Positions 5,569 through 63,951 of a stretch of DNA of 64,000 nucleotides are shown here, in pieces. The notes beneath the pieces were generated by a model. That model had not been told where the DNA came from and searched no databases. It worked only from the letters and a program-made list of their open reading frames with translations. The DNA comes from Octopus sinensis (lineage: Eukaryota): positions 248,001 through 312,000 of the forward strand of contig NW_021825323.1 in assembly GCF_006345805.1 (NCBI RefSeq). The letters run 5' to 3'. Both the position numbers and the translations under genes were made by a program. The number at the start of each line of letters is the position of its first letter. Position 1 is the first letter of the stretch.

Positions 5569-5689
5569 TTTTTCAATATTAATTTTTAATGACTATTTCT
5601 GTAAAATTATTTGTATTATGATATTATTTTTTACGTTTGTTTATTTTGAACGTATTGGATTTTGGAAAAGCTATGTTTATAATTCTCAT

Positions 5690-7290: not shown

Positions 7291-7869
7291 ATTTATATTT
7301 ATAATTGAAAAATAAAACAAATATTAAATACTACAAAAAATTAACGCTGAAAGGTGGAATGTTATATTCTTATCTTGCCTAAAATTGTCTCGGATATAAT
7401 AACAAAAAATGCTTTTAGCACGCAAAATGGAAAAAAATTGAAGAACGTATTAAAGAAACCATAAAATAAAGAATTTTGAACAAATTATAGATAATGATCT
7501 CAGATTCCGTAAAAGATAAGGACTTTATAGATTTTACGTACTTTGAAAATAAGGAACTTCATGAATTTCCTCAATACAATAATAATGAAAAATAACAATT
7601 TAGACTGCAGAATTACTGGAAATTGGGTGAAAAAAAAATTATCAAAAATCGAGATGCGATAAAAAGTGTTTTCGGCCTCAAAAATATTTTTCAAGTGACG
7701 AAAATTTTGATGTAAATATTGTTCAAAGTTCAATACAAATATTTAAAAAATATGAAGAAACAATCATGAAAAAATCTCGAAATGATCACTTTACTTATAA
7801 TTTTGATTTTAGAAATTTATTTATTAGGACCAAAAACACCGTCATAACCATAATTAATTATTTCAGGTG

Positions 7870-10710
7870 ATTTCAGGCCATTGGCTTCTTTTCGAAGATC
7901 ATTCTGGAAGCAAAAGCAATGGCTATTCCTAAACGTCCACCTCACCACAGGAAATCCGACTCACTCCCCTCCAACAGAAGCCTAAAAAAACGGGCTGAAC
8001 CGCTCCTCCTCTCGGTAAAGGAGGTGGAAGATACCTTGCACTCAACAAAACCTTCTTACTCTCACGGCCCCGACAAAATCCCGGTGATCCTATTAAAAAA
8101 CCTTGGCGTCGAAGGTGTCAGATTCCTAACAGCAATCTTCAACCATTCTATCAACAACAACGTAATTCCTGCATTATGGAAACAGGCCTTAATAAGGCCG
8201 ATACTGAAGCCTGGAAGACCAAGAGGGGACCCGGCATCTTTCAGGCCGATTTCCCTGTTATGCTCGATGTCAAAAATCCTGGAAAGACTGGTTCTTGGCA
8301 GAATAGAAGCTTTCTTACCCGAAAGACATTTAGTCCACGTCTTCGTACCTCCAATCCTTGTCTAACTTCATCTGTACCGGTTTTGCCAGCAAACCGAGGC
8401 ACCAAAAGACAGTGCTCTGCTCCATAAAGCCTTTGACTCCGTCTCGAGGAAGCTCCTCTCAAAGAAGATATTCCAATCCGACTTTTCTCTGAAGCTAAAA
8501 ATATGGATTACCAACTTCCTAAGTGGACGAAGGGGAAGAGTGTGCCTCGGTGGTCTGAAGTCCAAATCTCGTCTTCTACCCAACGGAGTACCTCAGGGAT
8601 CCCCCTTATCCCCGGCCCTCTTCAACCTATTTTTGGAAGACCTCCCTCGACAACAATGACATTGTTCTCTCATACGCGGACGACATTTTACTAGCCTCAC
8701 GGGACCGGGACATCCAGAAGGCCTCTGAAAGGCTCCAAGCTAACTTGGATCGGCTGAACCTATGGCTGACGGACAACCGGCTCGTGGTAAACGCGGCGAA
8801 GTCCGCCACGTCCCTCTTCACCTCGGATAAAAGATTGGGAAAGACATCAGTCGACTTAAAGCTGAATAATACAGTACCGGTCATATGTTTTAGACATTCT
8901 GAAAAAATCCCAGTGTTTGATTTTTCTAAAGAAAAATCTTATTAAAAAATGCTTTTCATTAAGCATTATCCATTTTTTTTAGTTATTTATTTTTTCCCAA
9001 TCTCATCGTCACTGTATTTTCGACATCTTGATCTTTTTATAGATTTGTCGAAACTGGCCCAGTCATATGTTTTAGACATTACGATGCAATCCATCCATCT
9101 GGAATTTTTAAAGTTAAAACGAGTTTTTATTAATTAAAACACAAGTTAGTATTTAGTTACATCTCCTTTTTTCGATATCATCATGTATTCTATTTGGGAT
9201 CGACAAATACAAGTTTTGAATATAATCACTCCCATCTTGTTCATTCATCTTTTGCCATCTCCCATAGTTGCTTAACGTTCTGAGGGTTTCTATTTCTGAT
9301 TTTGCTCTTAAATAATGCCAGCAATTTTCTATTATGTTAAGATCTGGCGATTGTGCAGGCCAATTGTTTAAAATATTCACTCCTTTTTCAAGCAAATAAT
9401 TTTTGTAGACCGTGAAGTATGACATGATGCACCATCTTGTTGGAAAATAAAGTTATCATCATATATCTCAGAAAGCCCTTGTTCCAAGATTCGTTGATAT
9501 TCTACGGAATCTACATTTCCTTCGCACAATATCAAGGCACTTTTTCCATCGTGTCTGATACCGCCCCAAACCATGATTGAAGGTGCGAATTTCTGAGTTT
9601 TCGTTGTGTAGTTCGAATTGAATCTATTTCCAGGAGGTCTCCTTACGAATTCTCGTGCTTTCGAAATTAATTCGATGCGGCACTCGTCAGTAAAAGTGAC
9701 CTTATTCCAATCGAATGAATGTTTCTAGTGCAGAATATTTTTCTCTTCTTGATTTATTAGTTGAAAGTCTAGGTTTTTTGGCTGCTATTCTTACGAAAAG
9801 TTCATTTTTGCGTAAGATTCTTCGTACAGTTTCGACACTGACGGTTTCCGTATTTTAGGTCTTTTCTGATTTCATTCGCTGTTTTTTTGGGAAAACGTCG
9901 AGACTCACGTACAAGATTCCTTTGAGCACGTGCCGAAAGAATACAATTTCTTCCAGATTTTGGTCTGTCGTAAAACCCATTTCCATCCAATACCGTTGGT
10001 AAGTGTGATTTACGGCGCCATCTGGATATTCCAAGTAAAATCGATATTTCCTGTACGGTATGACCATTTTCTCGCATAAAAACAATTCTATGACGCTGTT
10101 CAACAGAAGTCGTGGCATACTGCTTTCAATTAATTTAAAACACGTTTCCGATACGAAAAATAGAAAAAAAGTATAAATTTTATTGAAATATAATGAATTT
10201 AAATAAAATGTCTAAAACATATGACTGGGCCAATTTCGACAAAATCCTTAAACATATGAAGAAGTCGAAGATAAAGCGAAGATAAGATATGAAAATGATA
10301 AATATATAATAATATAGATAATACTTACTAAAAACTTTTATTTATTGGATTTTTCTTTAGAAAAATCAAACTGGGATTTTTTCAGAATGTCTAAAACATA
10401 TGACCGGTACTGTATATCCGTTCCCTTCTGCAGGAGTCAGACGGTCCTAGGGGTAACCCTCGACATGCACCTCTGTTTCTCCCCTCATGTGGACAACCTC
10501 CTTCGTAAATGCGAACAAAAACTGAACATTCTACGAACTCTATCTGGAATTTGGAAAAACGGGTCGCACCCGGTACTGGCGAATATCTACCGCCAGTACT
10601 TCGAACCTTGTGTTGCGTACGCTTGCGGATCATGGGGTCCGCGGCTATCGTGGTCCAACAGGAGGCGAATCGAGGAGGCCCAACAAAGGGCCCTCAGATT
10701 AACCGATCGT
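7870..10710 (+). mobile_element. Non-LTR (I/Jockey-like) RT pseudogene split by a Tc1 insertion
   Basis: GPDKIP, FRPISLL, KAFD, GVPQGS (frameshifted) and YADD before 8871; thumb region VLGVTLD resumes after 10414. Confidence 0.85.
8872..10412 (-). mobile_element. Tc1-like transposon with IR-DR-type ends, frameshifted transposase
   Basis: TIR CAGTACCGGTCATATGTTTTAGACATTCTGAAAAAATCCCAGT at both ends; TA TSD; inner repeat CAGTCATATGTTTTAGACATT; MVWGG, QQDGA and WPAQSPDLNIIE motifs. Confidence 0.92.
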
Positions 10711-11160
10711 TGGTCACTTGATAGCCAACGTTCCGGTCCAGCCTCTCTGGAAGACCTCATCAAGCTGAATATCGACAAATTCCCCAATCTTTTGTTATTT
10801 GTGAAAAAGGTTAACTCAGACTTTTCCGGGCTTGCTTTCAACAGATTGGCATTGAACCATATACACAGGTTATTTATAATTTTCTGTAATCTTCTTGTAG
10901 CTTCGCTGACACATATATCCCTCGATGCAACGATTATATCATCCGCATATGATAGTAAAATGTCATTCTTGTTTTCAGGAAGAGGCATATCGTTCAACAT
11001 TAGGTTGAATAATACGGGGAATAGGGGGAACCTTGTGGCACTCCATTCGGTAGTAGCCTCAATGCAGACTTTCGATTGCCCTTGTAAACTCCAGAAAATT
11101 GGCAAGCCATGGTTTTAAATTTGGTTCCATATTCAACGAGTAAATTTTCTGCATAAGAAT
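10710..11160 (-). mobile_element. Non-LTR RT fragment in opposite orientation
   Basis: WLANFL, NGVPQG (frameshifted), PVLFNL, LSYADD and SPEKS motifs. Confidence 0.8.
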
Positions 11161-11470: not shown

Positions 11471-14400
11471 ATGAAAAGACTTCCTGTTGAATCAATTAAA
11501 ATCATGCAAGCATCCCAAAAAATAAGATCCTACGCACACTGTGTGGAAGAATTTGTGTTAAATTGCATTAAATCTGATTCGAAAACCGTAAAAGTTGATC
11601 TCGATTACAATGGATGTGTGCTTAAAATTACCAACGACGGTTATGGGCTCTCGAAACAACAGCTGAGCAATCTTTGTAATAGGTTAACAGTGCTTTGAAT
11701 CTCATCTAAAGGTCTATGGAAGACGAAGCCAATTATTTAATTCATTTTGATTTCCTCATTTCCTCTGTGGTGGAAATTTCTAGAACATTAACAATTATTT
11801 CCAAGTCGTCTGAACACAAAGTGGCCTATGCGCGTCAATTTAATCGACGTGGGAACCATTCTTCTGTTAGCGTCTCAGAGAGATCGGCCTTTGGCACAAC
11901 AATAGTTGTTTCTGGATTATTCTCTGCCTGTCCAATTCGCCTAAAGTCAACTAATCAGGTAATTTTGTAAAAAATATTCCCAAATTTTATCTTTCTATTT
12001 AAAAAGGAACGAGAATGTAGTCGGGTTGTCTCAGTTTTGAGAAATATAGCTCTAATAAATCCAAAAGTACAATTTTTCTTTACAAATCGTGGAAAGCCAG
12101 TTTTTTCCGTGGCCAAACGATCTCCTTCCCTAATAAATAGAGCCCAGGACCTTCTTGGACTGGAATATCTGTCAACTCTAAGCAACAGAACGACAGATTT
12201 CAAATTAAAAATACACTTTTTTGTCAAATCTCGACACTCTAATACAATCGCCAAAAATACGGATCAAGTTCAGTATCTCTTTTTAAATGGACTTCGAATT
12301 CATTCCACTTTTTTGATCAAACAAATCTTAAGATCTCTCCGTTCCAAGTTCAGCAAGTCTCAAAGAACTTGTCTAACAGGTTGCAGACACTCCTATTGCT
12401 TTATTTTGATTCTTACATGCTCTGTGGATTGCTATTCTATCTTTTACGGAAGATGTGGGTGGGATGTCGATTTCTTGGACGTTAATTATGTCAGAAAGCT
12501 TGTTGTTGCTACATTTCATAAAAGTCCAAGAGTATTTGACTCTGAAGATCTAGTTGACAAGTCTTCGGATTCTGATATGCTCAATTATGAGTTCAAAGAG
12601 ACCACAAACGCAAAACCGTTTATTGAATCGTCATTTTTTTCTCAGTCTTCAAAAAATGTATTTCTGCCCACAATATCGTTTGACGGATCTCAAACTAGCG
12701 ACTTTGACTCGGATTTGTTATATTGTCTTAAAAAGAAACGTGGACCTTATCGCAAAAAAAATAATCACCATCTTCGATTAAACGATTCGACTTTATTCGA
12801 TACTCCAAGTTTTGGAGAAGAATTTCTTAAATCGAATTTTCCAGCTGTTGACCCTTCAGCGTTTATTTTTGGAGACCACGAAATAGATGATTTTCCTAAT
12901 CACTATGAAGATTTTTTTGATATGTGTCCAGATAATGTGCCTGACTATCGAAAACAGAATATTTTTTCACGATATGGAATAAATAGATTTGAAGACAGCT
13001 CTCCAACTTTTTTAAAGTCCATTTCAATTCATGAAAAACCGCATGATATATATGACGCCAGTCTCCGTGAAACTTGTTCTATTAACCATACCAGAATGGG
13101 TAGAGAAAATCTGTTTAGTGACGATTCCCTAACGGGCTTTTTTCAAACATCTCTAGATAATGAGAATTTGAGAACTGACTACATTCATGATACTATGAAA
13201 TATCCATATGAAAAAAGCATGTCAAAATTCAGTCCTGTCAGTAAACGAAGGCCTAACCTAGTTCAACATGATTGCAACTTTTCTAATTTCCCGCGTCATT
13301 TGTTTGACGAAGAAACTAGATATTTTTCTCCTAAATCCTCCGAGTCATTTTACATTGAAGAAAACAAAAGAAATGCCACTCAAATGAAATATATACAAAA
13401 TTTGGATTCAGAGCTGGATAACACCACAGGTACTTTATTCGGATATTCGTTCTTTGGTTGAAATTCTCGTTTTGGTTCTTGTTGTTTAGTTTTAATACAT
13501 TTTTATGTGCCTAATTCTTTTAAAATAGTCCGCCCGACGACTCCTTTGAAATCTGTTTCTCTTGTTAGAAGAAATGATGTATCTATATTTAAATATAATT
13601 TCATAAAAATAGGCCAAGTCTTTGAAATTGAAAAAACAGTTGTTTTAGATATTTTACATTAATTAGAAATCCCTCAACAGTTCGCCTAGACAAAATTTCA
13701 CTAGTAAAATCTCGAGTCTGTGAAAAAATTTATAATTTCAAAGGTTGTTGGCCTTTTCGAATCAAGCGTAATTATTTGCCTTTTGAAAGACACAAAAAAT
13801 AGTTAGTAAAAAAGCGATAATTTGACTAGTCGAGCACCTCGTTGCAATAGATCAGCATGCTGCAGATGAACGTATTAAACTGGAAGAATTATACAATGGT
13901 TTAATTTTTTTCATAAAATGATTAAGAAAACTTTAAAAACGGGAAATGTATTAAAACCTTTTATTTGAATAATACAAAAATCAATGTCTCTTGTCTTGTA
14001 TCGGAGTTTATTTCTAAGAAGAAAAAATATTTTGAAAATTTGGGTTGTTATTTTCACGATATTTGTATTATAGGTTTTCAGTTTCGTGTTGCTGAAACTC
14101 AATTCGGTACATTTCGAACTGTTAGTGTTTTACGCGCCCCAAAAGCTTTGAAAAAAAGAAAAGGTTCTATAAACTTCTCGTCTTCAATAGAGGTAATTCC
14201 AATAACATCGGTTATTTAGAGAAGAGTGTAATTATGGACGTATTTAATGTATAATTATTACTAATTCGAAAGCATTCTGACGGTGTCGACTTTTCATCTA
14301 CTTATTTCCCCCGTGCATTGGAAGATTTATTTGCATCATTGGCTTGTCATTGTTAGAAAAATTATTTTGTTAATATTTTTTGGTAGCTGCGGTCCGTTTT

Positions 14401-15410: not shown

Positions 15411-16582
15411 CAAAAAGAGAACTTGGAATAGTTCACCAAATGCATATTCTGTCACCGCAACAATCTAATTATTATAAAAATAAAAGACATCAGAATCAGT
15501 TTCAAAATTATCAAGTACAGTAAAGTCTCTCGAATCCGCCGACTCTCGAATCCGCCATACCCTCGAATCCGCCAATTATAATTAATAAATTCTCTTATCC
15601 GCCATTTTTCCTAGAAAAAATTCTCGAATCCGCCAAATTCTCGAATCCGCCATGTGTCCTAATTTTAAATAATTTTTTTAATTAAATTTACTGATATATA
15701 ATCAATTTATTAACACGTTACATCTGTCTTTGTTGTTGTATTAATGAAACGTAACTGTACAAGACTAAAAAACAATCAAAAAATTGAGATTTTGAAGTTT
15801 ATTCAAACAAATAATGAATTATCTTCACTAAAAATTTCTGAGATTTTTTCAAAAAAATACAACTTGCCTGTTTCTCGCCGATCTATTGATGATCTGAAAA
15901 GTAAAAGAGGATCTAACATTATGTTTCATAACCTAAGATCTGACATTTCCCGCAAACAATATTTAAAGTTTGCTGAAATCGATGATAATACTATTGCTTG
16001 GGTCAATTCAATGGATCTTAAAGGAGCCATTTTAAATAATAGGATTATTACTGAGAAAGCAAAAGCCTTTGCATTGAATCTCGGGATTACTGAATTCAAA
16101 GGAAGCAAAGGGTGGTTAGTTAAATTTAAAAAAAGGAATGGTTTGAAATTACGTAATATGCATGGAGAATCTGCAACTCCAAATTTTGACCCTAATTTAG
16201 TATCAGATTTCATTGAATTAATCAAAAATAAAATCAGTCTTTACGGAGCTCAAAATGTTATAATGCCGATGAAACTGGCTTATTTTACAAAATGATACCG
16301 TCTAAGAGTGTTTGTAAAACCATTAAATCTGGCTATAAAGTCCTGAAAGACAGAGTTTCTGTTATGTTATGTACAAATGTTGACGGTACAGATAAGCGAA
16401 CACCCTTACTAATTGGGTTGTTTAAAAATCCAAGATGTTTCAAGAATTTCGATATCAAAAAATATGTTATATATTCAAATTCAAAGAGAGCATGGATGGA
16501 TAGCAGAATTTTTAATTAATTTCTATTAAAATGGGAAATGGAATTGCGAAAACAAGATAGAAAAATTTTGCTTGTTGTAGAT

Positions 16583-34269: not shown

Positions 34270-34560
34270 TTAATTAGTAGCAGAGAATAAGATGGAATGG
34301 CAATTCCCACGCAAGATGGCTATTGATATGCATTGGAAAAGCCATGTCCATTCCTGATCAATATTTCCCTATCTGATGCGGAGCCCGGCTCTGCGGCTGA
34401 CGTAAAGATGTTTCCGGCAGAGAAGGTGTCCGTGCAAATTGCGTCCCAGATGAGCGACTTGCCATTTTCGAAGGGGAAAGTCGTTAGGCCGTCAGGACGT
34501 TTACCATCCTCCCGAAAGTTGATTCTATTTGTAATTAAACTTGGCATTCTGTTCATCCAA
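34270..34560 (-). mobile_element. CRE-like REL endonuclease fragment, internally deleted
   Basis: DGKRPDG, LIWDAICTDTF and AILRGNCHSILSSATN*. Confidence 0.8.
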
Positions 34561-38908: not shown

Positions 38909-40280
38909 TGTGACATAATTTGCGTGATGCCTATGGGCCGCGTGATACCTGACGTGACCTTGAAGCTTAACTTAATGTCAATATTGTAATTAATATGATA
39001 AAGTGTTTGAAAATGATAATTCCAGTGAATATGCAAACATATTTTTAAAATTACGAAAATCCCAGAAATGATCAGAATAGACACTCAAAATAGCTAATTA
39101 AGTGTCAGCAGTGGCTGCACCTCGGATTGCACGCGAGTTACCTCGCAAGATTGCGATCGATATCCTCTGGTACAGCCAGCCGATTTGGCGGTGGTCCTTC
39201 GTGCACTTGTGGATGCACTTCCCGATTTCGGTCAGAAGCGACACTCCGGCCGTCCCTATCACTGCACTTGTCTCCACAGCAATCGGGACAAAGTGGTAAT
39301 TTGGTGGGAGAGAGGCGTATTTCTTCCGCTTCGTCTCCTCAGACCGACGGGAAGCGAAGTCGGGGGAGGACGCAGACTGAGCAACGGTCCCGGGGGCAAA
39401 GGTGTCCGCGCAGGTAACATCCCAAACGAGACACTTCCCCTCCGAGAATGGAAAGACCGTCATTCCGTCTGGACGCTTGCCGTCGCCACGGTCGAGGCCG
39501 GCAGGCTCCAGAACAGAAGGGAAGCCTGCGGCATTGAGGGCCTGTTTAACGACGTGGTTCAGGCCAGCGTGTCTCGGGATACGCCCGGTGCTTAAGCGGC
39601 ACGAAAGGGGGTGGAGACCATCGGGGTCAATTATGTGGCCGCACTTGCACCGGTGAGGGTGGCAAAGGGGAATTTCCAGACGAAGACAGGTTCCGATTCG
39701 AGTCGATTCATCATCCAAGAGGAGGCCAGTAATTAATATTAAACTTCACAGAATAATAACTTGTTAATTATTTTTCAAGTCTGGACATTGGGACAATCGA
39801 AATTTCGCTCATCGAATTTTTTATCTATTAAATTTAAATGTTTAAACTACCTCAACGCGATTGTTTGATACAATTGTTCCAAAGTCTTTTTTAACTCGAA
39901 CCTAAACATTAATTTTTATGCATACTTTATCACCAACACTAAATTCATACTTACTATTGTGAACATTCATTTTTCTGTTCATCGCTTTGTAATAATTAGA
40001 ATTAGGATCAATGGGGTTGATTTCGAACTGAAATCTTTTCGGACTTGATAGAAATTCAAATTACATGAATTTTCAATTTGATTCGGACAATTGTTTGCAT
40101 CATCGACTTGATCAGGGCTCAACAAATCATTACTTGAATTATCTAAGGAATAATTTTATAATTACAACCATAAAATATTGTATTTATTCCACTTATTCCC
40201 CGGTATTTTTCAAAAGGGCTCTCATTAGAAGATGAGTGGACAGAAATGTTATAAGTAGAGCAACATTTTTATCTAAGTAG
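38909..40280 (-). mobile_element. Ginger2-like integrase element remnant
   Basis: Terminus TGTGACA...GGGCCGCGTGATACCTGACGTGACCTTGA shared with 56644; YNISVHSSSNESPFE and FSVGDK(intron)VRVKKDF. Confidence 0.7.
39090..39730 (-). mobile_element. CRE-like retrotransposon 3' portion (Zn knuckle plus REL), 5'-truncated
   Basis: HRCKCG, HPLSC, PRHAGLN, GKRPDG, WDVTCADT, AVETS and AILRGNS in an intact 206-aa ORF. Confidence 0.9.
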
Positions 40281-40287
40281 AGCAACT

Positions 40288-40628
40288 CCGGACGATCTTT
40301 GGTCTGGGACGCAACTTGCGTCGATACTTACTCAAGCACGAATCTCCTTAAATCGGTTCAGACACCTGGAGCAGCTGCCTCAATCGCGGAAAACCTTAAA
40401 ACCAAAAAATATTCCTTCCTCGGGGACCGCTACAGATTCACCCCTGTTGCGGCTGAGTCATCAGGAGCTGTTGGCCCAGCGACTGCCGAGTTCTTGCGCG
40501 AACTCGGAAGAATGCTCGCCACAAAGAAAAATGATCCTCGTGAAGGAGTATGGCTAAGACAAAGGATCGGAATAGCCATACTCCGAGGGAACTCGCTTTC
40601 CATACAGGCAGCGGGCTTCCTCAATTGA
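40288..40628 (+). mobile_element. CRE-like REL 3' fragment
   Basis: WDATCVDT, AAESSG and AILRGNSLSIQAAGFLN*. Confidence 0.85.
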
Positions 40629-46875: not shown

Positions 46876-48520
46876 CAACAAAAACTTGTAATTTACACGC
46901 TGTTTAATATTTATTGTCACAGGCTGGATAATGCCCTGGGTTGGATAATACCCCCTTAAAAATTTTATTAAAATCAAACGAAAATAACCTGATAATTAAA
47001 AATAACTTGATAATGGAATTAAGTCGATTTATTCAATTTTTTATCAATTTTTTGATTGAATGAATTTTTCCAAGAGTCGACAAAAACAGGCATTACCAAT
47101 TTTTCCGAATCAATAACGTATTTTATCATAATTATACAATTTTTTAGGTCTACCATTTAAAAACAAATATTAAAAATTCATGAATTTTTATTATATAAAA
47201 ATTTTTTATAAGAGTCATTTTTTATACGACTTTTGTGTACATGTTTGGATGATTCGTCATTCAGATCGAGATAATCGGATCCAATTATCTCCGATTGACT
47301 TGATTCAACCGCTTCATTTCCATCGAATGACAATAACGCCGATCTTATTTCCTCCGGGATTAAATTATTTCCTCGCATAAAAATTTCGAAAGGTGTCCTC
47401 TTGGTCGTTTCATGCTTCGCCATGTTATATTTATAAACGATTTCTTGATAGAAGTCTTTATAGCTTGCGAAAGACCCATTTGAGGCACTAGTTGAGCTAA
47501 TCCACCTCTTGATCGATTGATTGAATCTAAAGATAAATTTACAAATAACTTGCCTTTCTACTTGACCCTGAATCCATGGTGCTTTAGGCGTCCACTTATG
47601 TGTATGATTTTCAGATCATTACACATTGTTTCCATACATTTGTTCTTAAATTTTTTTTTAAAACAGAGATTAATATGATAACTAGACAATGCAGTTATTT
47701 TGAACTGCCGGCGCATAAGATGGCCTGGCAGTTCCCTCGGACGATCGCCAACGAGACTCTTTGGAAAAGATGACGAGTCTCGTTGGGATCCTTGTTTCGT
47801 CTGGCAATCTTCGACCCCAGCCGACGAAGGAAAGAAAGCGATTCTGGGCCGATGACCCCGGATGTCTCTACGGCTACTGGCGCAAAAATGTGGTTTCTGG
47901 CCAGGTACGAGTATTTTCTTGTTTTTGTGACCTCCGCATGTCTTGCCGCTGAGCCGGGCTCAGCAGCTGATGAAATCAGGTTATGCGGGGAGAATGTGTC
48001 GGAGCATGTCGCGTCCCAGATGAGGCATTTCCGGTGATCGAAGGGAAATGTTGTCATGCCATCTGGGCGCTTTCCATCTCCGCGATCCAACCCGACTGGT
48101 TCCCCAGCACATTAGGGAATCCCGCAGATGCCAGGGCGCGGCTCACCACCTCCATTAAGCCCAGAGTGTCGAGGGAAACGTCCAGCGCTACGCCGGCAGG
48201 ATAGCGGGTGCAGTCCTAGGGTGTTCAATCATCTGGCCGCAGCGGCATTGATGTTCACGGCAGATGTTTGTCTCTATTTACTATGTCACATGCCTCAGGG
48301 ATTACTATGCCCACTCGTTACCTCCGAATTATTTCTGAGAAATAATGGATTAATGATTTTTCAATTTTTTAGAAAATTAATAATAATCACAACGAATAGG
48401 AATAGGAAGTTTTATTGGAAACAGAGAAGGGTTAAAGGTTAGGGGGGAGTTTGTATAATGAAACAATAGGACTACCCTATCGACTTCTTCCCAGAAAAAA
48501 AAAAAAAAGAGACCCCCTCA

Positions 48521-50490
48521 AGTAAATTTTTTTTTTTTTTTTTTTTTTTTCTTTTCTACCTCTGCAGGTACGTCCCAGTGACAATTGAGTTGGATTTATA
48601 ACCACTTATAGCTTTTTCGACAGTTTCACCGACCATGGAGGATTTACTTTCAAGCCACAGGGGGATTGGGTCTTCAACTTTTTGGTGGTAAGCAAGCTTC
48701 AAAGCGAGCCTGCGAGACTTTTCAAATTTAGTTAAGATGGTGTCCTTCTTTTTAGAGAAGTACCATCCCTCTTTTCCGTATAGTAGTCCCGGTAGGATCA
48801 CCGTATTGAAAACGTAGAGGAAAGTATCAGGCTCCAAATTTAACTTCCTCAGGCAGAACAGAGCATTAGTTGCTTTCCTTTTACTTAATTTTGCGTTTTC
48901 GAGATAGTTTCCCTTTTCATCGATGAACAAGCCAAGATATTTAATTGAGTTTTGTCGAGGTATGTTCTTGATCAGGCACGGTAAATTTATTAAATTTCTG
49001 CTTTCTGTGATTCTCAGTAATGCGGACTTCTCACGCGCAATAATGAACATATTTTCATCGCACCATTGCTCCACTGTATTCATATATGATATAATCCTTT
49101 GTTCGGATAAGGCAGGTTTCGATGAAATGTCAAGGATTACAACATCATCGGCGTATATCAAAATTTCCGTCCGTGTGTTGACAGGAGACGGCAGATTGCT
49201 CATCACAATGTTGAATAATAGAGGACTGAGGACTGATCCTTGAGGGACGCCTCTTTTAAGTTTCAGTTCATCCGAGTCATAGTTCAGAAAGCTTATCACA
49301 GAGCGCCTGTCGCGGAGGAAGTCTTTTAGCCATAGGAATAGTCCTTTGTCTATGTGACACTTCGCCAGATGTCTAAGGAGACCGAGGTGCCAAACCATAT
49401 CAAAGGCTTTTGAGATGTCTAGAGACACAATTGTCAGACACTCTTTGAAATCCAGAGCCTTTACAATCGACGAATTGAGTGTATAAAGACAGTCAGCACA
49501 GGAACGACCCCTCCGAAAGCCCCACTGCACGTCTTTGAGATAACCATTTCTCTCGACGTGTTCAGAGAGTCGTTCAACATTACCCTTTCCATTATTCGAC
49601 TGATGGTAGGAATTAGGCTTATAGGCCTATAACTTGTCGCCAAGTAACCAGGTTTTCCAGGCTTCCGTATCATCCTTACCTCCGTCAGTTTCCATGAAGA
49701 AGGGACGTATCCCAAGCTCACACTGCGGGAGAAGAGACATCCCAAATATTCGTAAAGTTGCTTGGGAGCTTCTTTGAACATGCGCATGGTTATCTTGTCC
49801 TTTCCCGGAGCGTTATTTTTGGATTCTAACTGCATTTTCCACGTCTTTGCACGTTATAGATTCCGAGCACATTGGTAATGAGCTAAGATTGTCTTCCAAC
49901 TCTTTTTCCATATCAAAAAAGCTGAATCAGATAGATTTGTATCCGGATTGACTTCTTGTATTCTTTTGAGACTATCAGCAAATATGTTCGGGATTTCTTC
50001 ATGAGATGCAGGGGATCCATCTTGTTTTAGCAGTTTAGGTATAGTTTTCTCAGACGTCGAGGTTAATTTCGAGTAGACCTTCCAAAATTTGGACTTCCTT
50101 TATGTAGCTTTTTGCACTCAGTATTCCATTTTTTATCCTTCGCCACCTTCGCCGATTTTCTTATTTCTTCCGTAATGGTGAAGATTTCACTTTCCAAAAC
50201 GGACCGGTCACGAAAATCTGCGCAGCGCCGGAGTTTGTTCCTTAGACATTGTTTTTTCCTTAGTAGGATTTCAACATTCATGTTTGGCATGTGAGTTTTC
50301 CTATTGTTTGAGACGATTTTTGTAGAATATGTTTCCAGATAAGACTTTATGTATCCAATAAGGGAATTGCTAGACTTCTCGAGGTCCTCAGATGAAGAAT
50401 TTTCGTCAAGTTTAGGAGCGAAATTGCTCAGATAAAGTGTAAAACATTTTCGGTAGTGTTCCCAGTTTATAGTCGACAACGACATAAAAA
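48521..50490 (-). mobile_element. 5'-truncated LINE with poly(A) tail, inside the MITE
   Basis: APGKDKI, YRPISL, DISKAFD, GVPQGS, IYADD and KYLG over 3 frameshifted ORFs; stop at 48556 followed almost directly by a long A-tract. Confidence 0.92.
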
Positions 50491-50909
50491 TTCAACCTAT
50501 ATATTAGGTTAATTAGAGTACAATTTAATGATATACTAAAAGATGCTTTAAACAAATAAATTAAAATATATTTTTATACAACAACCATTTTGACTGATAA
50601 GCACATTAAAACATATTTTAAAAATGTGAATTGTGTGAAACGCTTTAAAGGCACATAATTTGATAGTTTTATAATTAACTCTAACCAGTTTTTAGTTTTA
50701 TTTAAAACATTTTTTGAAATGTAAAAAGATAAAGGTTTAAAATCATCTGTAGATCTCTTATAAAAACTCAAACTTTATCCAGTTTTTTAGTTTAAAATCA
50801 TATATAGATCTGAAGTTTAAAACGAAAAATTAAATTTGTCCTTTTTTGATTCTTTTCATGTGAACAATCTTTGTATCTCCATTCGAAAATTCTACTTTAA
50901 ATTTTTTCA

Positions 50910-51227
50910 AACCCTAAACCCAACCCCAATTCCCTAACCTTCACCCTAACCTTCACCCAAACCCTAACCTCACACCAAACCTCACCCAAACCCTAACCTT
51001 CACCCTAACCCTAACCTTCACCCTAACCCTAACCTTCACCCTAACCCTAACCTTCACCCTAACCCTAACCTTCACCCTAACCCTAACCTTCACCCAAACC
51101 CTAACCTTCACCCAAACCCTAACCTTCACCCAAACCCTAACCTTCACCCTAACCCTAACCTTCACCCTAACCCTAACCTATACCCTAACCCTAACCTATA
51201 CCCTAACCTATACCCTAACCATAACCA
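50910..51227 (+). repeat. Interstitial telomere-like array of CCCTAA with CCTTCA, CCCAAA and CCTATA variants
   Basis: About 50 hexamers organised largely as 18-mers CCTTCA-CCC(T/A)AA-CCCTAA. Confidence 0.95.
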
Positions 51228-51468
51228 TGAGATAAAACAGCATGCTTAATTTATTGTTTTTTAATGATAATGGTTAAGCATTGAAAAAATAAAAATCCAT
51301 AATATTATTAATTTTTAAATTAATAAGTAAATATATTTCAATCATTAAAATATTTAAATTGAAATTTTAAAAATTAGAGCAATGGTAACGAGAGGGGCAT
51401 GGTAACGAACAGGGCATGTGACATACTATATCCATCTTTTTTACATTGCCTCAATTTAGCATATCCAC

Positions 51469-53496
51469 ATGGTACTACCTTTCTCTAAAAAGTCTCTCCT
51501 ATGCTCTTCGTGCAACTTAAGCAACCTGAGGAAGAACGGCTGCCTGTGTTCCTCCTGCAAAAGCTTCTTTCATCTTTCCTGTGCTGGAATCTCTAAATTG
51601 GCCGCTTCAACCTTGTCCAAATGGACCTGCCCCTCATGCCACCCTCTTGCCCGCGGTTCGCGGCCGGTGTCTTCCAAAATTCTTTCCGATTCCAATAATT
51701 CCCAACCAATTACACCCATCCTATCAGTGAAAGATTTCCTCTTGTCGGTTTCCCGAGCCAAAAGGGTCCGTACTATCCCAGTCAAAATACCTAAGGCTGC
51801 GCGCATTCTCTCGGCCGAGTCTTTATCATCCGTTATCAACAAAGCGCTTTCTTTTAACGACCCATCCAGCTGGAACCATCTTTTCTGTTTTGGCATAATG
51901 GCTCTCGGTCTCCCTAAAGAAGGCACCCATAAACAGTCCAGAGGCCATAACATCCATCCCATTTCTATTTCGTCGCGATTTAAGGCTAACATATTGGCCT
52001 ACATGCCTTGTCCCTCGGATTTCTCTAGTTGGCTAGGTGCCACAGAGAAGGCCCAACGGAAGAACCAGACGCACCAGCCCCGCGTCCTACAAAACGACGA
52101 GGCTATTAACCGTGACGCCATACGTCTACGTGAACGTGTAAACGGCCAACTACTGGAAGGAAACGTTGCCGGCGCTGTGCGAGTACTGGCATCTGATTCC
52201 AAGGCCCTCGAAATAACTCCCCAAATCCTTACAGAACTAAAAGCGAAGCACCCCAATCCTCCAGACGACCAACGGTCCCTTATCACCCATTCTGACCTTC
52301 CAATCTCACATGCCTCAGATGAGGAAGTCCTCAATGCCATTAATTCTCTTTCAACTGGTAGCTGTGGGGGCATAGACGGCCTCCGGCCCGGACACGTCAA
52401 AGACATGCTCTCTCCCCAAACCTGTGAAGCCGGTCAGCGCCTCCTATCGTCCCTAACGGCTCTTACGAACCGAATTTTGAACGGAGAAATCTCCGAGTAT
52501 GCCCGCGATCTATTTTTTGCCGCTAATCTCACTGCCCTGAGGAAAAAGGAAGGCGGTGTCCGTCCCATCGCCGTGGGTTGCCTCTTCCGCCGACTGGCGT
52601 CGAAGGTAGCTTGCAGACAAGCCATCAAATTGCTGGGGTCCGAATTACGCCCAATACAACTCGGCGTAGGAGTTCGGGGTGGCTGCGAAGCAGCAGTCCA
52701 CGCCACGAGGAAGTTTGTGATTGCCTCCCAAGATCGGCAAGACAAGCCTTGTCTTCTCATCAAGATAGACTTGGCTAATGCTTTCAACTGTGTGCGTCGT
52801 GACACTTTTTTCGAATCCGCTACCCGTCGCTGTCCAGCAATCTCCCGTCTCGTCGCGTTGGCCTACGGCCAGCCCAGCCTCCTTGTCGCTGGTAATCAGA
52901 CAATCCCGTCCAGTAATGGAGTACAGCAAGGTGACCCTTTGGGCCCTCTCCTTTTCGCTCTGGCTGTGGATAACGTTGCCAGGAATGTATCATCCAAATT
53001 CAACGTTTGGTACTTGGACGACGCCACCATATGTGGTACATCTGAATCCGTTCTTGATGACCTGAGAATCATAATCCCTTCATTGCACGCCATTGGTCTC
53101 GAAGTCAATTCCAATAAATCTGAAATCATAAACATCAGTTACGACCCGCACCATTTTTCCGATATTCTTCGTTCCTTCAACTCGCTTTTATCGAACATTC
53201 AAGTCACCACGCCATCGAATCTCAAGATTTTGGGCTCCCCCATATTCAACACTGGAGTGGATCAAACTCTGTCCGAAAAAACCTCGAATCTCATATCTAT
53301 GTCCAGTAAGCTCACGACAATTGATTCCCATGCGGCTTTATTTCTATTGAAGAATTGCTTCGCGATCCCCAAGCTAATGTTCACCCTCCGAAGTGCCCCC
53401 TGTTTTACAAATCACGTGGGCCTCTTCAGCTTCGACCGTGCCCTCAGGGCATGCCTCGAAGCAATTTGTAATGCCCCGTTTGATGACCTCGGCTAG
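51469..53496 (+). CDS. CRE-like ORF: PHD finger plus reverse transcriptase, premature stop
   Basis: C4HC3 CSSC...CSSC...H..C...W.CPSC; GGIDGLRP, RPIAVG, DLANAFN, QQGDPLGP and WYLDD; the frame continues past the TAG to ~53650. Confidence 0.92.
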   Translation: MVLPFSKKSLLCSSCNLSNLRKNGCLCSSCKSFFHLSCAGISKLAASTLSKWTCPSCHPLARGSRPVSSKILSDSNNSQPITPILSVKDFLLSVSRAKRVRTIPVKIPKAARILSAESLSSVINKALSFNDPSSWNHLFCFGIMALGLPKEGTHKQSRGHNIHPISISSRFKANILAYMPCPSDFSSWLGATEKAQRKNQTHQPRVLQNDEAINRDAIRLRERVNGQLLEGNVAGAVRVLASDSKALEITPQILTELKAKHPNPPDDQRSLITHSDLPISHASDEEVLNAINSLSTGSCGGIDGLRPGHVKDMLSPQTCEAGQRLLSSLTALTNRILNGEISEYARDLFFAANLTALRKKEGGVRPIAVGCLFRRLASKVACRQAIKLLGSELRPIQLGVGVRGGCEAAVHATRKFVIASQDRQDKPCLLIKIDLANAFNCVRRDTFFESATRRCPAISRLVALAYGQPSLLVAGNQTIPSSNGVQQGDPLGPLLFALAVDNVARNVSSKFNVWYLDDATICGTSESVLDDLRIIIPSLHAIGLEVNSNKSEIINISYDPHHFSDILRSFNSLLSNIQVTTPSNLKILGSPIFNTGVDQTLSEKTSNLISMSSKLTTIDSHAALFLLKNCFAIPKLMFTLRSAPCFTNHVGLFSFDRALRACLEAICNAPFDDLG

Positions 53497-54664
53497 GAGC
53501 AGGCAATCCTCCCGGTTAGCCACGGTGTCATCGGTGTGAGCTCTGCCGCCGATCTTTCCCTGCCAGCATTTCTTTCCTCTGTTCACGCCACCAGCTCTCT
53601 GGTCCACGAGATTCTCCAATCCACTATTGAATCCCCCGTGGACACTGATGCTGTTCTTAAATTCTTTCCCATTATCCGTCTTTAGAATAAATGGGGGACC
53701 AATCATGTAAAAAATATTCTTTAATTTTCTAGTAATTTCCTCCGCTGATTTCCGCCTGGCAAGTTTTACAACTGCGAATTTAGAAAATGAGTCTATAACC
53801 ACAACCAACTACAATTTATACAAAAAGAAATACCCATCCATTATCGCTATTAAGGCTAGCATAACTTTTAAATCTATCCCTTCCTCCTCGAAAATTAACT
53901 GTTCTGCTAATTTTCTGTATCTTTTTTTTCAGATTTCTGAAATCGGTCAATATAAAAAACATCTATTTGAATATTTTTGATTATTTCAAGTTCATCTTTG
54001 GTAAGGTTGAGTAAAACCATTTTTGAAATATAGATTTGATCGATTATACTTATTATTTTTTCAAATTGGAAAACTTAGATAACCAAAACAAATTTACCAC
54101 TTTTTATTATCATTGTCGATCATTTTTGCCATTTTTCTTGTAATTGACTGGTTGAAGCGTTCGACAATCCCTTGTGAGCGGAGATTGTTTGGCCTTCCGT
54201 GAATTCGTTTGATATTGAATTCCTCACATAGATTGGTCATTTCACGATTCTTGAATTCAGTCCCATTATCGGACTGAAGAAATTGACACGGACCATTTAA
54301 GAAAAATAATGATATGAGGTTTTCACAAACTTCATTTGAGGACTTAGTGTAGAGCGGCCTCGCAAATGCAAATCTATAAAAATTGTTAAAAAACTAACTT
54401 GCTATATACGTCAATGACCGTTAAAATCCATTTAAAATTTTTATTTATAGTAGAAAAACTTTTCAGATCTATAAGATCTATCTGAAATCTTTCATTTGGG
54501 CAAGATGCAAAGACATGGTTATTTATATCTCCAATCTAGGATTTAAAAAAGTTAAAACTTTTAAGGGTCGCGCAAATTCACAAATTTCACAGTTTCGAAT
54601 GACTTTTCGAATAATCTAATTTTTTTTCCTGAAATCACAATCTCTGAAAATTAATCATTTAGTA

Positions 54665-62029: not shown

Positions 62030-63951
62030 ATGGGAAAATCCTTCCGTAAATCGGTCATCTTTGCTGTTTCTTTAATTGCATTGTGGGCTAATTCAATTGC
62101 TTCACTCCGGGTTGTAAGTATTAGAGAGTAATTGGAAATCATTATAAAAGAAAATACTGCATGTTTATCCAATTTTAGTGCCGTGCTTTTCTGGACCCAA
62201 TTGTCGCAACTTAACTTGTATAGTTTACAATACAGTACCGCTCAAATGTTTCGGACCACCCTATTTTTCTCAATTTCCAAGTCAATCCTAAATTATTTTT
62301 ATACGGTTCTTTAGAGAAACTTATTAGATAAGCTTAAATACATTTATTCTATTCTAAATTTTTCTTTAAATATTTTTGTTTGGCGCCAATTGAATATAAT
62401 TGATTTTTGACTCGATCATATGTTCCGGACCAGTTGCAATCATATGTTTCGAACCAGTTAAATCTCTTTAAATTTAAATAATTTTTGATTCAATTAAAAA
62501 CAAAAGACTAATAAATAACAAATGCCGCGTGTTTCACTGGTTGATCGGGTCGCTATCATCACTTTTTTTAAAGATGGAGCTTCACAAAGAGAAATTGCCG
62601 AAAAATTAAAAATATCCAAAACTGCTGTTCAAAGAACAATTTCCAGATATTCATCCGTTGGACTATATTCCGACAGACCCAAATCTGGTCGACCGAGATT
62701 GTTATCCCCAAGATCTGAACGCAAATTAGTGAGAATTTCGAAAGCAGACCCCACAAAAACGGCAAATTAAATTTGATATGAAATTAAATTCTATTGTAAG
62801 CACAAATACAATTAAAAGATGCCTACAAAGAAATAATTTGAATGGGCGAAAGCAATGCCCAAAACCAAGTCTTTCCATATGCCATAAAAAGGCTAGAAAA
62901 AATTGGTGCATTGAGAAATTAACTTGGAGCCAAAATGATTGGGGTAAAATTATTTTTAGTGATGAATGCAAAATAAATTTGCATTCAAACACAAAAAATT
63001 ATGTTAGAAGGCCACCAAACTCTAGATTTGACTCAAAATATTGTTTAAAAACACGAAAATTTTCTCCTAGCATTATGGTCTGGGGAGCTATTGCTGCAAA
63101 TGGATGGAGAAACATTGTCTTATGCATTAAAAATGTTGATTCCGCAGAGTATCAGAGAATTATAAATGTTGGACTCGAAAATTTTTATGATGAGACCATG
63201 TATCTCCAGCAAGACGGCGCTCCTTCCCATCGGTCCATGTCGACAATGAATTTTTTTCAAAGGAAACAAATAAAAATCTTAGAAACTTGGCCGAGCCAGT
63301 CACCCGAACTGAATATTATTGAAAATATGTGGTCGGTACTAAAACAAAAACTTTATGATCTGGAACCAAAAGATCTTCCAGAGCTCTGGAATTTGACCAA
63401 AAAAATTTGGTACGAGATTGATAATTCGTACATTGAAAAATTATACAATTCACTTCCAGAGCGAATAAATGCTGTTATAACGAACAACGGAGGAAATATT
63501 AATTATTAACTTTTTATAAGTTTAATAAATTTTCGGTTTTTTTTAAACTGGTCCGGAACATATGATCGAGTATAAAATCGATAATTTTAAAATTGCGCCA
63601 AACATGAATATCTGTCCAAGTTTTTAAAATAGAATAAATGTGTTTAAGCTTATCTAATAAGTTTCTCTAAAGAACCGTATAAAAATAATTTAGGATTGAC
63701 TTGGAAATTGAGAAAAATAGGGTGGTCCGAAACATTTGAGCGGTACTGTAGTGTAGAAATCTATTTCAAACATAAAGATTCCTCCATTGTATACACATAC
63801 AAGAATTACGGTCAAAAAATATAACAAGAAATCAAATATACCGATAATTGTTCTGGGAGTATAAAATTTGATAATATTCCGTTTATGAAATTATTCAACA
63901 TCACTGGGTTTACATTACAAGACAGTCTAGAAAACAAATAAATTCAAAAAA
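62030..63951 (+). pseudogene. Secreted/surface protein gene disrupted by Tc1 and a premature stop
   Basis: MGKSFRKSVIFAVSLIALWANSIASLRV, a 37-nt GT-AG intron (62114-62150), then KILHVYPILVPCFSGPNCRNLTCIVY; the frame is restored across the Tc1 TA: NSVEIYFKH...KI*QEIKYTDNCSG...NITG. Confidence 0.55.
62233..63748 (+). mobile_element. Tc1-like transposon with long (about 200 bp) inverted ends, one frameshift
   Basis: TIR CAGTACCGCTCAAATGTTTCGGACCACCC; TA TSD; ORFs 62522-62770 (HTH) and 62778-63509 (FSDEC, QQDGAPSH, SPELNIIE). Confidence 0.95.

What the first reader, a model, noticed from the sequence alone, without database searches (positions are those of the whole stretch)
47641..53663. Near-full-length CRE-clade retrotransposon with a twin-priming-type 5' inversion
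The minus-strand REL/A-tail arm (47653-48278) and the plus-strand PHD-RT arm (51429-53651) are one insertion. A 12-bp TSD TGTTCTTAAATT brackets both, and removing them restores the Ginger frame DNGKEFKN-KCMETMC. The geometry (inverted arm's 3'-most point at the outer flank, 5' ends joined inside, short coding gap) matches twin priming. This is well known for APE-type L1, but I do not know it as documented for REL-type CRE elements. It implies a staggered cut and second-strand-primed reverse transcription.
Basis: partly seen in the sequence, partly recalled or inferred. Interest (0 to 1): 0.75.

Follow-up and report, generated by a model that had tools for sequence, protein, structure and literature searches.

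The report
Head-to-head retrotransposon insertion, mismatched arms
One insertion event in an octopus-like genome placed two oppositely oriented pieces of R2-like (restriction-endonuclease-type) retrotransposons between a 12-bp target duplication, as twin priming would, but the two pieces appear to come from different element lineages, so this is not one inverted near-full-length copy.

Summary
TGTTCTTAAATT occurs only twice in the window, at 47641-52 and 53652-63. Joining the flanks restores an rve-integrase frame. The left arm (48278->47653, minus strand) carries the endonuclease domain, a 35-nt 3' UTR and an A9 tail. The right arm (51429-53651, plus strand) carries a PHD finger and a reverse transcriptase from the start codon on. 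The antisense of the plus arm is joined directly to the top-strand nick, which is the twin-priming geometry.

"One near-full-length element" is not supported.
- The plus arm is sister to an Octopus sinensis copy (75% aa, 200/200 bootstraps). The endonuclease arm is only 61% identical to that copy, no closer than to distant relatives. Intact element pairs at 72-78% RT identity keep 71-91% endonuclease identity.
- The endonuclease arm has three frameshifts in 0.57 kb. The plus arm has none in 2.2 kb.
- The 3146 bp between the arms is a TA-flanked unit with terminal inverted repeats, and it contains another dead LINE.

Best reading (about 0.42): a twin-priming-type event that used heterologous templates, followed by a nested transposon insertion at the junction. 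Rivals are same-element twin priming, a retrocopy of a composite transcript, and an assembly artefact. Interest is moderate, and this is a single case.

The parts
47641..47652 (.). Left copy of the 12-bp target-site duplication TGTTCTTAAATT
   Evidence: Exact 12-mer. There are only two copies in the window.
47653..47661 (-). A9 tail of the minus-strand arm (T9 on the plus strand), directly next to the duplication
   Evidence: Sequence read.
47662..47697 (-). 35-nt 3' UTR and the stop codon (47695-47697) of the endonuclease arm
   Evidence: ORF 47695..48090. The L001 copy also has a 35-nt UTR.
47698..48278 (-). Endonuclease (REL/RLE) arm: a CCHC motif and a PD-(D/E)xK-type domain. It is 5'-truncated, with frameshifts at 48229, 48153 and 48103-4. 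Homology to relatives runs to about 48274-6.
   Evidence: tblastn to P0002 and P0006. Frame reconstruction. Fold of an intact homologue (P0124; the arm's own 131-aa ORF was one row of the alignment) matches R2 endonuclease domains. Extent of homology.
48279..48280 (.). TA, left copy of the putative 2-bp duplication of the nested inverted-repeat unit
   Evidence: TA|CTATGTCACATGCC ... GGCATGTGACATAC|TA.
48281..51426 (.). 3146-bp non-autonomous unit bounded by imperfect terminal inverted repeats. The core is about 48 bp (48281-48328 and 51380-51426), with weaker AT-rich pairing to about 150 bp. It sits at the junction of the two arms.
   Evidence: Collinear inverted repeats I8, I1, I2 and I4. 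Alignment. Score 28.5 against shuffles 16.4 +/- 2.5, with 0 of 500 shuffles reaching it. The motif occurs only at these two places in the window.
48523..50485 (-). A different, 5'-truncated non-LTR retrotransposon nested inside the unit, with RVT_1 and an A25 tail (T-run 48523-48552). It has 2 frameshifts and 1 stop.
   Evidence: Pfam RVT_1 at 1.8e-30. Three-frame read. T-run.
50943..51208 (.). 18-bp tandem array ACCCTAACCTTCACCCTA (15 copies, telomere-like CCCTAA) inside the unit. A short inverted remnant lies at 48430-48452.
51427..51428 (.). TA, right copy of the putative 2-bp duplication of the nested unit
51429..51468 (+). 40-nt AT-rich leader before the start codon of the plus arm. It is either a 5' UTR remnant or junction filler.
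   Evidence: Sequence. No similarity to the element sequence upstream of the endonuclease arm.
51469..53651 (+). PHD-RT arm. The ORF starts at its native N-terminus, has a PHD finger at aa 12-57 and RVT_1 at aa 358-589, and runs on to ...ESPVDTDA. It has one in-frame TAG (53494-6) and no frameshift. It ends at an internal point of the element, directly against the duplication.
   Evidence: It is 76% nt and 75% aa identical to O. sinensis L001/P0006.
53652..53663 (.). Right copy of the 12-bp target-site duplication
53664..53808 (-). Upstream part of the interrupted host ORF (rve integrase core). It continues at 47652 and below on the minus strand.

Best explanation
This is one target-primed reverse-transcription event at a 12-bp staggered break in an integrase ORF, and it produced two cDNAs head to head. 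That is the twin-priming mechanism, but with heterologous templates.

Proposed steps:
1. The nick on the window's plus strand (...AAATT|CTTT) primed on the A-tail of an RNA that ended in the 3' part of one REL-type LINE lineage. This gave the 626-nt endonuclease arm.
2. The nick 12 bp away on the other strand (...AAGAACA|AATG) primed internally on the RNA of a second, younger lineage. Synthesis ran about 2.2 kb to, or nearly to, that RNA's 5' end, giving the PHD-RT arm.
3. The two cDNA ends were joined in the middle.
4. Later, a TA-targeting non-autonomous DNA transposon, already carrying a dead LINE, inserted into the AT-rich junction.

The two templates were either two separate RNAs or one chimeric read-through RNA in which an old fragment of the first lineage lay downstream of a full-length copy of the second lineage.

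Shown: the duplication, the A-tail, the orientations, the end points, the restored host frame, the lineage and decay discordance of the arms, and the TA-flanked inverted-repeat unit.

Inferred: the priming events, the order of events, and the number of RNAs.
For: Single event: the 12-bp duplication occurs only twice and the host frame is restored. An A9 tail lies next to one copy of the duplication. The antisense strand of the PHD-RT arm is joined directly to the 3' end of the other copy, at an internal element position with no tail. That requires priming from the second nick, or an RNA that already contained that antisense sequence.

Stagger: a 12-13-bp stagger is normal for these elements. 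The L001 copy is an ordinary 5'-truncated insertion with a 13-bp duplication.

Enzyme type: the endonuclease domain, modelled on an intact homologue, folds like the R2 endonuclease. The top six PDB matches are R2 proteins at probability 1.0.

Heterologous arms:
- The RT part is 74.7-74.9% identical to L001 and sister to it in 200/200 bootstraps. The endonuclease arm is 60.8% identical to L001, against 59-63% to distant relatives, and is sister to L001 in only 50/200 bootstraps.
- Ten pairs of intact elements with 72-78% RT identity keep 70.7-91.4% endonuclease identity.
- dN to L001 is 0.333 for the endonuclease arm and 0.158 for the RT arm, and dS is saturated for both. The extra distance is lineage divergence under selection, not decay.
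- Identity of the plus arm to L001 is still 80% in its last full 60-codon bin (codons 300-359 of 364), so the switch coincides with the switch of arm.
- There are three frameshifts in 0.57 kb against none in 2.18 kb.

Nested unit: it has TA on both sides and an inverted repeat above chance. Tc1/mariner-type transposase ORFs occur in the same window.

Precedent: L1 chimeras with a second RNA in antisense orientation have been attributed to twin priming (PMC13174262).
Against: - Only one close reference lineage (L001/L002) was available. If that lineage, or the source of this copy, is a recombinant, the discordance would not mean two templates.
- The frameshift contrast rests on small counts (p about 0.01-0.03 by my own binomial estimate).
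- The inverted-repeat unit lies within about 4 nt of the 5' end of the endonuclease arm. A random TA insertion would land in the 52-nt junction region only about 6% of the time (6 of 106 TA). The junction is, however, the only AT-rich stretch.
- The nested LINE looks at least as decayed as the PHD-RT arm (3 defects against 1). A late insertion therefore requires the unit to have moved with its passenger already inside.
- No second example was found in the few copies examined.
- The window is an assembly and no reads were checked.
Confidence: 0.42

Rival explanations
1. A single RNA of one near-full-length element underwent classical twin priming with a loss of about 240 nt, and the inverted-repeat unit inserted later.
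For: The geometry, the duplication and the A-tail are as above. The arms do not overlap and are consecutive on L001, with a gap of about 240 nt. Both arms have similar G+C, 0.53 and 0.50. One of about 42 calibration pairs with at least 65% RT identity (P0086/P0073) is also discordant, so recombinant or mosaic elements may exist.
Against: The endonuclease arm is no closer to L001 than to distant relatives, whereas the RT arm is its sister in 200/200 bootstraps. dN is twice as high in the domain that is normally the more conserved. A recombinant master would need its breakpoint inside the 240-nt gap. The frameshift counts are three against none.
Confidence: 0.13
2. The whole 6 kb is an ordinary 5'-truncated retrocopy of one long read-through or antisense transcript. 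That transcript came from another locus where an old endonuclease-arm fragment, with or without the inverted-repeat unit, and an inverted full-length copy of the other lineage already lay head to head. The transcript ended at the fragment's A-tail site.
For: It explains the different lineages and ages of the arms, and the decay of the nested LINE, with no special priming. Copies of these elements do lie head to head within a few hundred bp elsewhere: window 39107-39730 and 40287-40613, and L001 2505-5025 and 5242-7980.
Against: It only moves the problem of the abutting 5' ends to an unseen source locus. It also needs antisense transcription through 2.2 kb of one element, possibly through an A25 tract, and mobilisation in trans of a 3-6-kb RNA. 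No paralogous composite is present in the window or in the fetched loci.
Confidence: 0.2
3. The arrangement results from rearrangement after insertion, such as an inversion or recombination using the inverted repeats, or from an assembly mis-join between repeated elements.
For: There is an inverted repeat at the inner ends of both arms. The region is dense in repeats.
Against: Recombination between the two inverted repeats would flip only the segment between them, not the arms. Any inversion that turns the PHD-RT arm needs a breakpoint exactly at the boundary between the element and the duplication. The outer junctions restore a host ORF precisely.
Confidence: 0.1
4. Snap-back synthesis, as reported for R2 proteins in human cells. 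The cDNA 3' end folded back and copied the cDNA itself before the 5' junction formed.
For: This is a documented route to antisense-oriented 5' junctions for REL-type enzymes (PMC11371274).
Against: Snap-back makes an inverted duplicate of sequence already present in the direct arm. Here the inverted arm carries upstream sequence (PHD-RT) that is absent from the direct arm, and the self-comparison of the region against the window listed no match between the arms.
Confidence: 0.02

Closest known systems
L1 twin priming (Ostertag & Kazazian 2001, Genome Res 11:2059; cited through PMC6895275 and PMC13174262)
   Same: A target duplication flanks a direct, tailed 3' arm and an inverted upstream arm. 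The inverted arm's 3'-most point lies at the outer flank, and the 5' ends are joined inside with a gap.
   Different: The enzyme here is REL/RLE-type, not APE-type. The arms do not behave as one template. The internal junction now holds a 3.1-kb transposon.
Chimeric L1 insertions with a second RNA in antisense orientation, attributed to twin priming (PMC13174262)
   Same: Two different templates lie in opposite orientation within one TPRT event.
   Different: In the published cases the second RNA is a tRNA, 5S rRNA or mRNA fragment, and the enzyme is L1 ORF2p. Here the second template is a full-length RNA of a related LINE, copied for 2.2 kb.
R2 'snap-back' 5' junctions in PRINT assays (PMC11371274)
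   Same: A REL-type enzyme, with antisense-oriented element sequence joined to the upstream target.
   Different: Snap-back duplicates the cDNA itself. Here the inverted arm is non-overlapping upstream sequence. The published cases are engineered insertions in human cells, not natural copies.
R2 and the other early-branching REL-type LINE clades (CRE, NeSL, R4, Hero)
   Same: There is a single ORF with an N-terminal zinc-binding domain, an RT, and a C-terminal CCHC motif plus PD-(D/E)xK endonuclease. The best sequence and fold matches in the PDB are R2 proteins.
   Different: The elements are not site-specific: the target sites and 5' flanks differ between copies. The N-terminal domain is a PHD finger. 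They make 12-13-bp duplications.
Tc1/mariner-type non-autonomous elements (for the nested unit)
   Same: Terminal inverted repeats, TA on both sides, and no transposase of its own.
   Different: No other copy was found, so the family is undefined. The repeats are imperfect, and the unit carries a telomere-like tandem array and a dead LINE.

Membership tests
REL/RLE-type non-LTR retrotransposon (R2-like architecture) | Reverse transcriptase domain of the non-LTR type | tested here: met
   Pfam RVT_1 at 1.4e-20 on the plus arm. The best PDB sequence matches of the full-length relative P0002 are R2 proteins.
REL/RLE-type non-LTR retrotransposon (R2-like architecture) | C-terminal CCHC motif followed by a PD-(D/E)xK restriction-like endonuclease fold | tested here: met
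   C-x-C...H-x3-C and RPD...WDAT...K are conserved across 42 homologues. The AlphaFold model (pLDDT 85, first sequence P0124, an intact homologue) matches R2 proteins 8gh6, 9dou, 8iby, 8ibz, 9nl3 and 9nl2 at probability 1.0. In the window's arm this domain is broken by three frameshifts.
REL/RLE-type non-LTR retrotransposon (R2-like architecture) | No APE endonuclease, and a single ORF | tested here: met
   The full-length relatives of 968-985 aa carry only RVT_1, some also PHD, in the precomputed Pfam domains, and are single ORFs.
CRE clade (CRE1/CRE2/SLACS/CZAR and relatives) | RT phylogeny that groups the element with reference CRE elements | not testable with these tools
CRE clade (CRE1/CRE2/SLACS/CZAR and relatives) | Site-specific insertion (spliced-leader genes in the founding members; from my own knowledge) | tested here: not met
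   This copy sits in an integrase ORF. L001 sits at an unrelated site with a different duplication. Other copies in the window have unrelated 5' flanks. Rfam found no RNA gene in 47000-54500.
Twin-priming 5' inversion | One target duplication brackets both arms, and the tailed arm is next to one copy | tested here: met
Twin-priming 5' inversion | The inverted arm is joined at its 3'-most point to the other copy of the duplication, and the 5' ends face inward | tested here: met
   Position 53651 corresponds to about aa 728 of a protein of about 975 aa. The ATG at 51469 faces inward.
Twin-priming 5' inversion | The two arms are consecutive parts of one template RNA | tested here: not met
   The positions are consecutive, with a gap of about 240 nt. 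The lineage affinities are discordant: RT 75% identity and sister in 200/200 bootstraps, endonuclease 61% and sister in 50/200, against a calibration range of 71-91%. This rests on a single close reference lineage.
Twin-priming 5' inversion | Microhomology between the second-nick primer and the internal priming site | tested here: inconclusive
   L001 and L002 read ...GAGTCAGTCGCC where the window reads ...GATGC|TGTTCTT. At most 2-4 nt could be shared, and at 75% identity this cannot be decided.
Twin-priming 5' inversion | The arms are joined directly at the inversion junction | tested here: inconclusive
   A 3146-bp TA-flanked inverted-repeat unit lies there. If it is removed together with one TA, the arms are at most about 45 nt apart.
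Tc1/mariner-type non-autonomous transposon (nested unit) | Terminal inverted repeats and a TA duplication | tested here: met
   TA|CTATGTCACATGCC ... GGCATGTGACATAC|TA. The repeat is above chance, with 0 of 500 shuffles reaching its score.
Tc1/mariner-type non-autonomous transposon (nested unit) | Other copies of the family with the same termini | tested here: not met
   None were found in the window or in 28 kb of O. sinensis loci. The source genome was not available.

The most novel reading that the evidence does not exclude
This would be a natural example of twin priming by a restriction-endonuclease-type (R2-like) LINE in which the second nick primed reverse transcription of a different element's RNA over 2.2 kb to its 5' end. 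It would show that the second-strand 3' end of REL-type integration complexes can engage a second RNA in vivo and so build chimeric, head-to-head insertions.
Probability: 0.3. Interest if true: 0.6.

Novelty: new variant of a known kind. Interest (0 to 1): 0.4.

Why it matters
How REL-type LINEs finish integration (second-strand cleavage, priming and 5' joining) is still poorly understood, and it now matters for R2-based gene insertion tools. If natural copies show that the second nick can prime on RNA, and even on a second RNA, that would explain antisense and chimeric 5' junctions and would extend twin priming beyond APE-type L1. This is one decayed copy with unresolved templates, so it is a lead for a genome-wide survey and not a demonstration.

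Tried and rejected
- Site-specific insertion of both arms into the two copies of an inverted target. This was rejected because the A-tail is followed by integrase sequence rather than the other half of a target, and other copies have unrelated flanks.
- The inverted repeat as a shared 5' UTR, with the endonuclease arm as a deletion derivative. Nothing supports this. The motif is absent upstream of the ATG in three distant full-length relatives, and L001 and L002 are 5'-truncated. It is not strictly excluded.
- A ribozyme or RNA gene at the junction. Rfam found nothing at E <= 1.
- Continuation of the endonuclease-arm element on the far side of the inverted-repeat unit. The 40 nt at 51429-68 show no similarity.
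- Snap-back. The arms do not overlap.
- Finding the source genome, or closer relatives with both domains. The window's ORF is not on record. The best endonuclease-arm relative is 65% identical. The metagenome scan gave only 35-41% relatives.
- A recurrent head-to-head arrangement as a family property. The other two pairs are independent elements, each with its own 3' end.
Full report
**1. What is there**

The 12-mer TGTTCTTAAATT occurs at 47641-47652 and 53652-53663 and nowhere else in the window on either strand. Identity stops exactly at 12 bp. Deleting 47653-53663 restores, on the minus strand, an uninterrupted ...FILKTDNGKEFKNKCMETMCNDLKIIHISG... This scores as a Pfam rve integrase core. 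Everything between the two copies therefore entered in one event or as a nest founded by one event. Whether the host element is a "Ginger" transposon was not tested.

**2. The arms**

Plus arm:
- It has an ATG at 51469, a PHD finger at aa 12-57 and RVT_1 at aa 358-589.
- The frame continues to 53651 with a single TAG (53494-6) and no frameshift.
- Its N-terminus aligns with the N-termini of intact relatives of 968-985 aa, so the ORF is 5'-complete. Only 40 nt precede the ATG.

Minus arm:
- Read from about 48276 down to 47653, it encodes the C-terminal CCHC motif and the RPD...WDAT...K nuclease, a stop at 47695-7, a 35-nt UTR and A9 next to the duplication.
- It needs three frame corrections, at 48229, 48153 and 48103-4.

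An AlphaFold model of this domain was built on 42 homologues, with the intact homologue P0124 as the modelled sequence (pLDDT 85). Its six best PDB matches are all R2 retrotransposon proteins at probability 1.0. The RT of a full-length relative also matches R2 proteins best by sequence. The elements are therefore REL/RLE-type LINEs. The closest relatives are Octopus sinensis genes (P0001 77%, P0006 75%), so the window probably comes from an octopus or a close relative.

**3. Geometry**

In the orientation of the tailed arm (window minus strand) the structure is as follows:
- one copy of the duplication;
- the antisense of the PHD-RT arm, starting at an internal point (about aa 728 of about 975);
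- the inner junction;
- the sense endonuclease arm;
- the A9 tail;
- the other copy of the duplication.

The plus-strand 3' end ...AAATT is followed by the T-run. The minus-strand 3' end ...AAGAACA is followed directly by antisense element sequence. This is the product expected from twin priming.

A later inversion cannot easily produce it, because one breakpoint would have to coincide with the boundary between the element and the duplication. Recombination between the internal inverted repeats would turn only the middle segment.

The O. sinensis copy L001 is an ordinary 5'-truncated insertion with a 13-bp duplication (AAGAAACTGTTAT) and a 35-nt UTR. A 12-13-bp stagger is therefore the family's normal cut. 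On L001 the arms map to 5242-7172 and 7413-7846, which leaves a gap of about 240 nt.

**4. Are the arms one element?**

- From the RT core to its end, the plus arm is 74.7% identical to L001 but about 50% to three distant full-length relatives. L001 is 52-53% identical to those same relatives.
- The frame-corrected endonuclease arm is 60.8% identical to L001 and 59-63% to the distant relatives. L001 is also 59-63% to them. The pattern is a star.
- Among 73 intact relatives, the ten pairs with 72-78% RT identity have 70.7-91.4% endonuclease identity (mean 79.8). The window's value is typical of pairs with only 50-58% RT identity.
- By neighbour-joining, window + L001 are sisters in 200/200 bootstraps for the RT part (distance 0.31, against at least 0.73 to the others). 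For the endonuclease part they are sisters in only 50/200, at distance 0.55, against 0.50 to P0002.
- dN to L001 is 0.333 for the endonuclease arm and 0.158 for the RT arm, with dS saturated in both. The extra divergence therefore accumulated under selection in a different lineage and is not decay.
- The plus arm is still 80% identical to L001 in its last full 60-codon bin, so the change of affinity coincides with the change of arm.
- The endonuclease arm carries three frameshifts in 0.57 kb. The plus arm carries none in 2.18 kb and has one stop. By my own binomial estimate this has p of about 0.01-0.03.

Caveats: only one close reference lineage was available, and one of about 42 calibration pairs is also discordant, so mosaic elements may exist.

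**5. The middle**

- 48281-51426 is bounded by TA|CTATGTCACATGCC ... GGCATGTGACATAC|TA.
- The inverted repeat has a core of about 48 bp and weaker AT-rich pairing to about 150 bp. Its alignment score is 28.5, against 16.4 +/- 2.5 in shuffles, and 0 of 500 shuffles reach it.
- Inside are an 18-bp telomere-like array (50943-51208, with a short inverted remnant at 48430-52) and a different, 5'-truncated LINE on the minus strand with an A25 tail, two frameshifts and one stop.
- It looks like a non-autonomous TA-targeting transposon. Tc1/mariner-type transposase ORFs are present in the window, but no second copy of this unit was found.
- Homology of the endonuclease arm reaches to within about 4 nt of the TA, so the unit sits at the junction of the arms.
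- Six of the 106 TA dinucleotides in the arms lie in the 52-nt junction region. That region is the only AT-rich stretch of an otherwise 50-53% G+C insertion.

**6. Explanations**

Best (about 0.42): a twin-priming-type event with heterologous templates. These were either two RNAs or one read-through RNA in which an old fragment of one lineage lay downstream of a full-length copy of the other. The nested transposon inserted later. Antisense-oriented chimeras of L1 with other RNAs have been attributed to exactly this mechanism (PMC13174262).

Rivals:
- Same-element twin priming (0.13). It needs a mosaic master with its breakpoint inside the 240-nt gap, plus a chance clustering of frameshifts.
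- A retrocopy of a composite transcript from an unseen locus (0.2). It explains the discordances, but it moves the abutting 5' ends elsewhere and needs several extra steps.
- Rearrangement or assembly error (0.1).
- Snap-back, as seen with R2 proteins in human cells (PMC11371274). This is excluded because the inverted arm carries upstream sequence, not duplicated sequence.

**7. Known or new**

In the searchable literature, twin priming is almost entirely a mammalian L1 topic: 106 papers, and the 40 best-ranked were listed. Papers on REL-type elements mention it only as a possible relative of second-strand synthesis (PMC6895275) or cite it for snap-back junctions. A natural REL-type example would be a modest extension of a known mechanism. 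A two-template version over 2.2 kb would be more notable. The CRE-clade label could not be tested, and the founding members' site specificity is not met here.

**8. Verdict**

It is a new variant of a known kind. Interest is 0.4.

Noticed in passing
window 34374-34514 (minus strand): A short endonuclease-domain fragment. It is 90% aa identical to O. sinensis P0006 and 72% nt identical to the endonuclease arm. The L001-type lineage is therefore present in this genome as well.
   Followed up: partly
window 39107-39730 (-) and 40287-40613 (+): Two further 5'-truncated REL-type copies of different lineages lie head to head 556 bp apart. The first keeps an intact 206-aa ORF. L001 shows the same arrangement (2505-5025 minus, 5242-7980 plus). 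This makes three head-to-head pairs in the little sequence examined, which may be chance or a clustering tendency.
   Followed up: partly
L002 about 7790-7800: The O. sinensis copy L002 breaks off at ...GGCATA|CAGTGCTGGTAG..., which looks like another TA-flanked transposon end. The break lies only about 10-15 nt upstream of the position where the window's endonuclease arm begins. This could be a coincidence or a preferred TA site in these elements.
   Followed up: no
window 48103-48229: All three frameshifts of the endonuclease arm lie within the first 165 nt or so next to the inner junction. The remaining 131 codons form an intact ORF.
   Followed up: no
window 50943-51208 and 48430-48452: An 18-bp tandem array ACCCTAACCTTCACCCTA (15 copies, built from CCCTAA-like units) lies inside the inverted-repeat unit, with a short inverted remnant in the other arm of the unit.
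   Followed up: partly
window 48494-48552: A14 and T25 runs face each other across 14 bp. The T25 is the tail of the nested LINE. The A14 may be the tail of a short plus-strand retroposon that ends at 48508.
   Followed up: no
window 54097-54300 (minus strand): A second rve-core fragment (...LQSDNGTEFKNREMTNLCEEF...) lies upstream of the interrupted integrase ORF, so two integrase cores sit in tandem on the minus strand.
   Followed up: partly
window 62778-63509 (+), 15744-16295 (+): There is a Tc1/mariner-type transposase ORF (DDE_3 and HTH_Tnp_Tc3_2) and a Tc5/pogo-type HTH ORF. TA-targeting transposons are therefore present in the region.
   Followed up: partly
window 12037-13461 (+), 10345-11118 (+): ORFs of 474 aa and 257 aa with no Pfam match.
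   Followed up: no
L001 7996-8044: The O. sinensis copy ends in ...AATAATATTT, directly followed by its 13-bp duplication and with no A-tail. The window's endonuclease arm ends in ...GTTTT plus A9. The two lineages may differ in how their 3' ends are primed.
   Followed up: no
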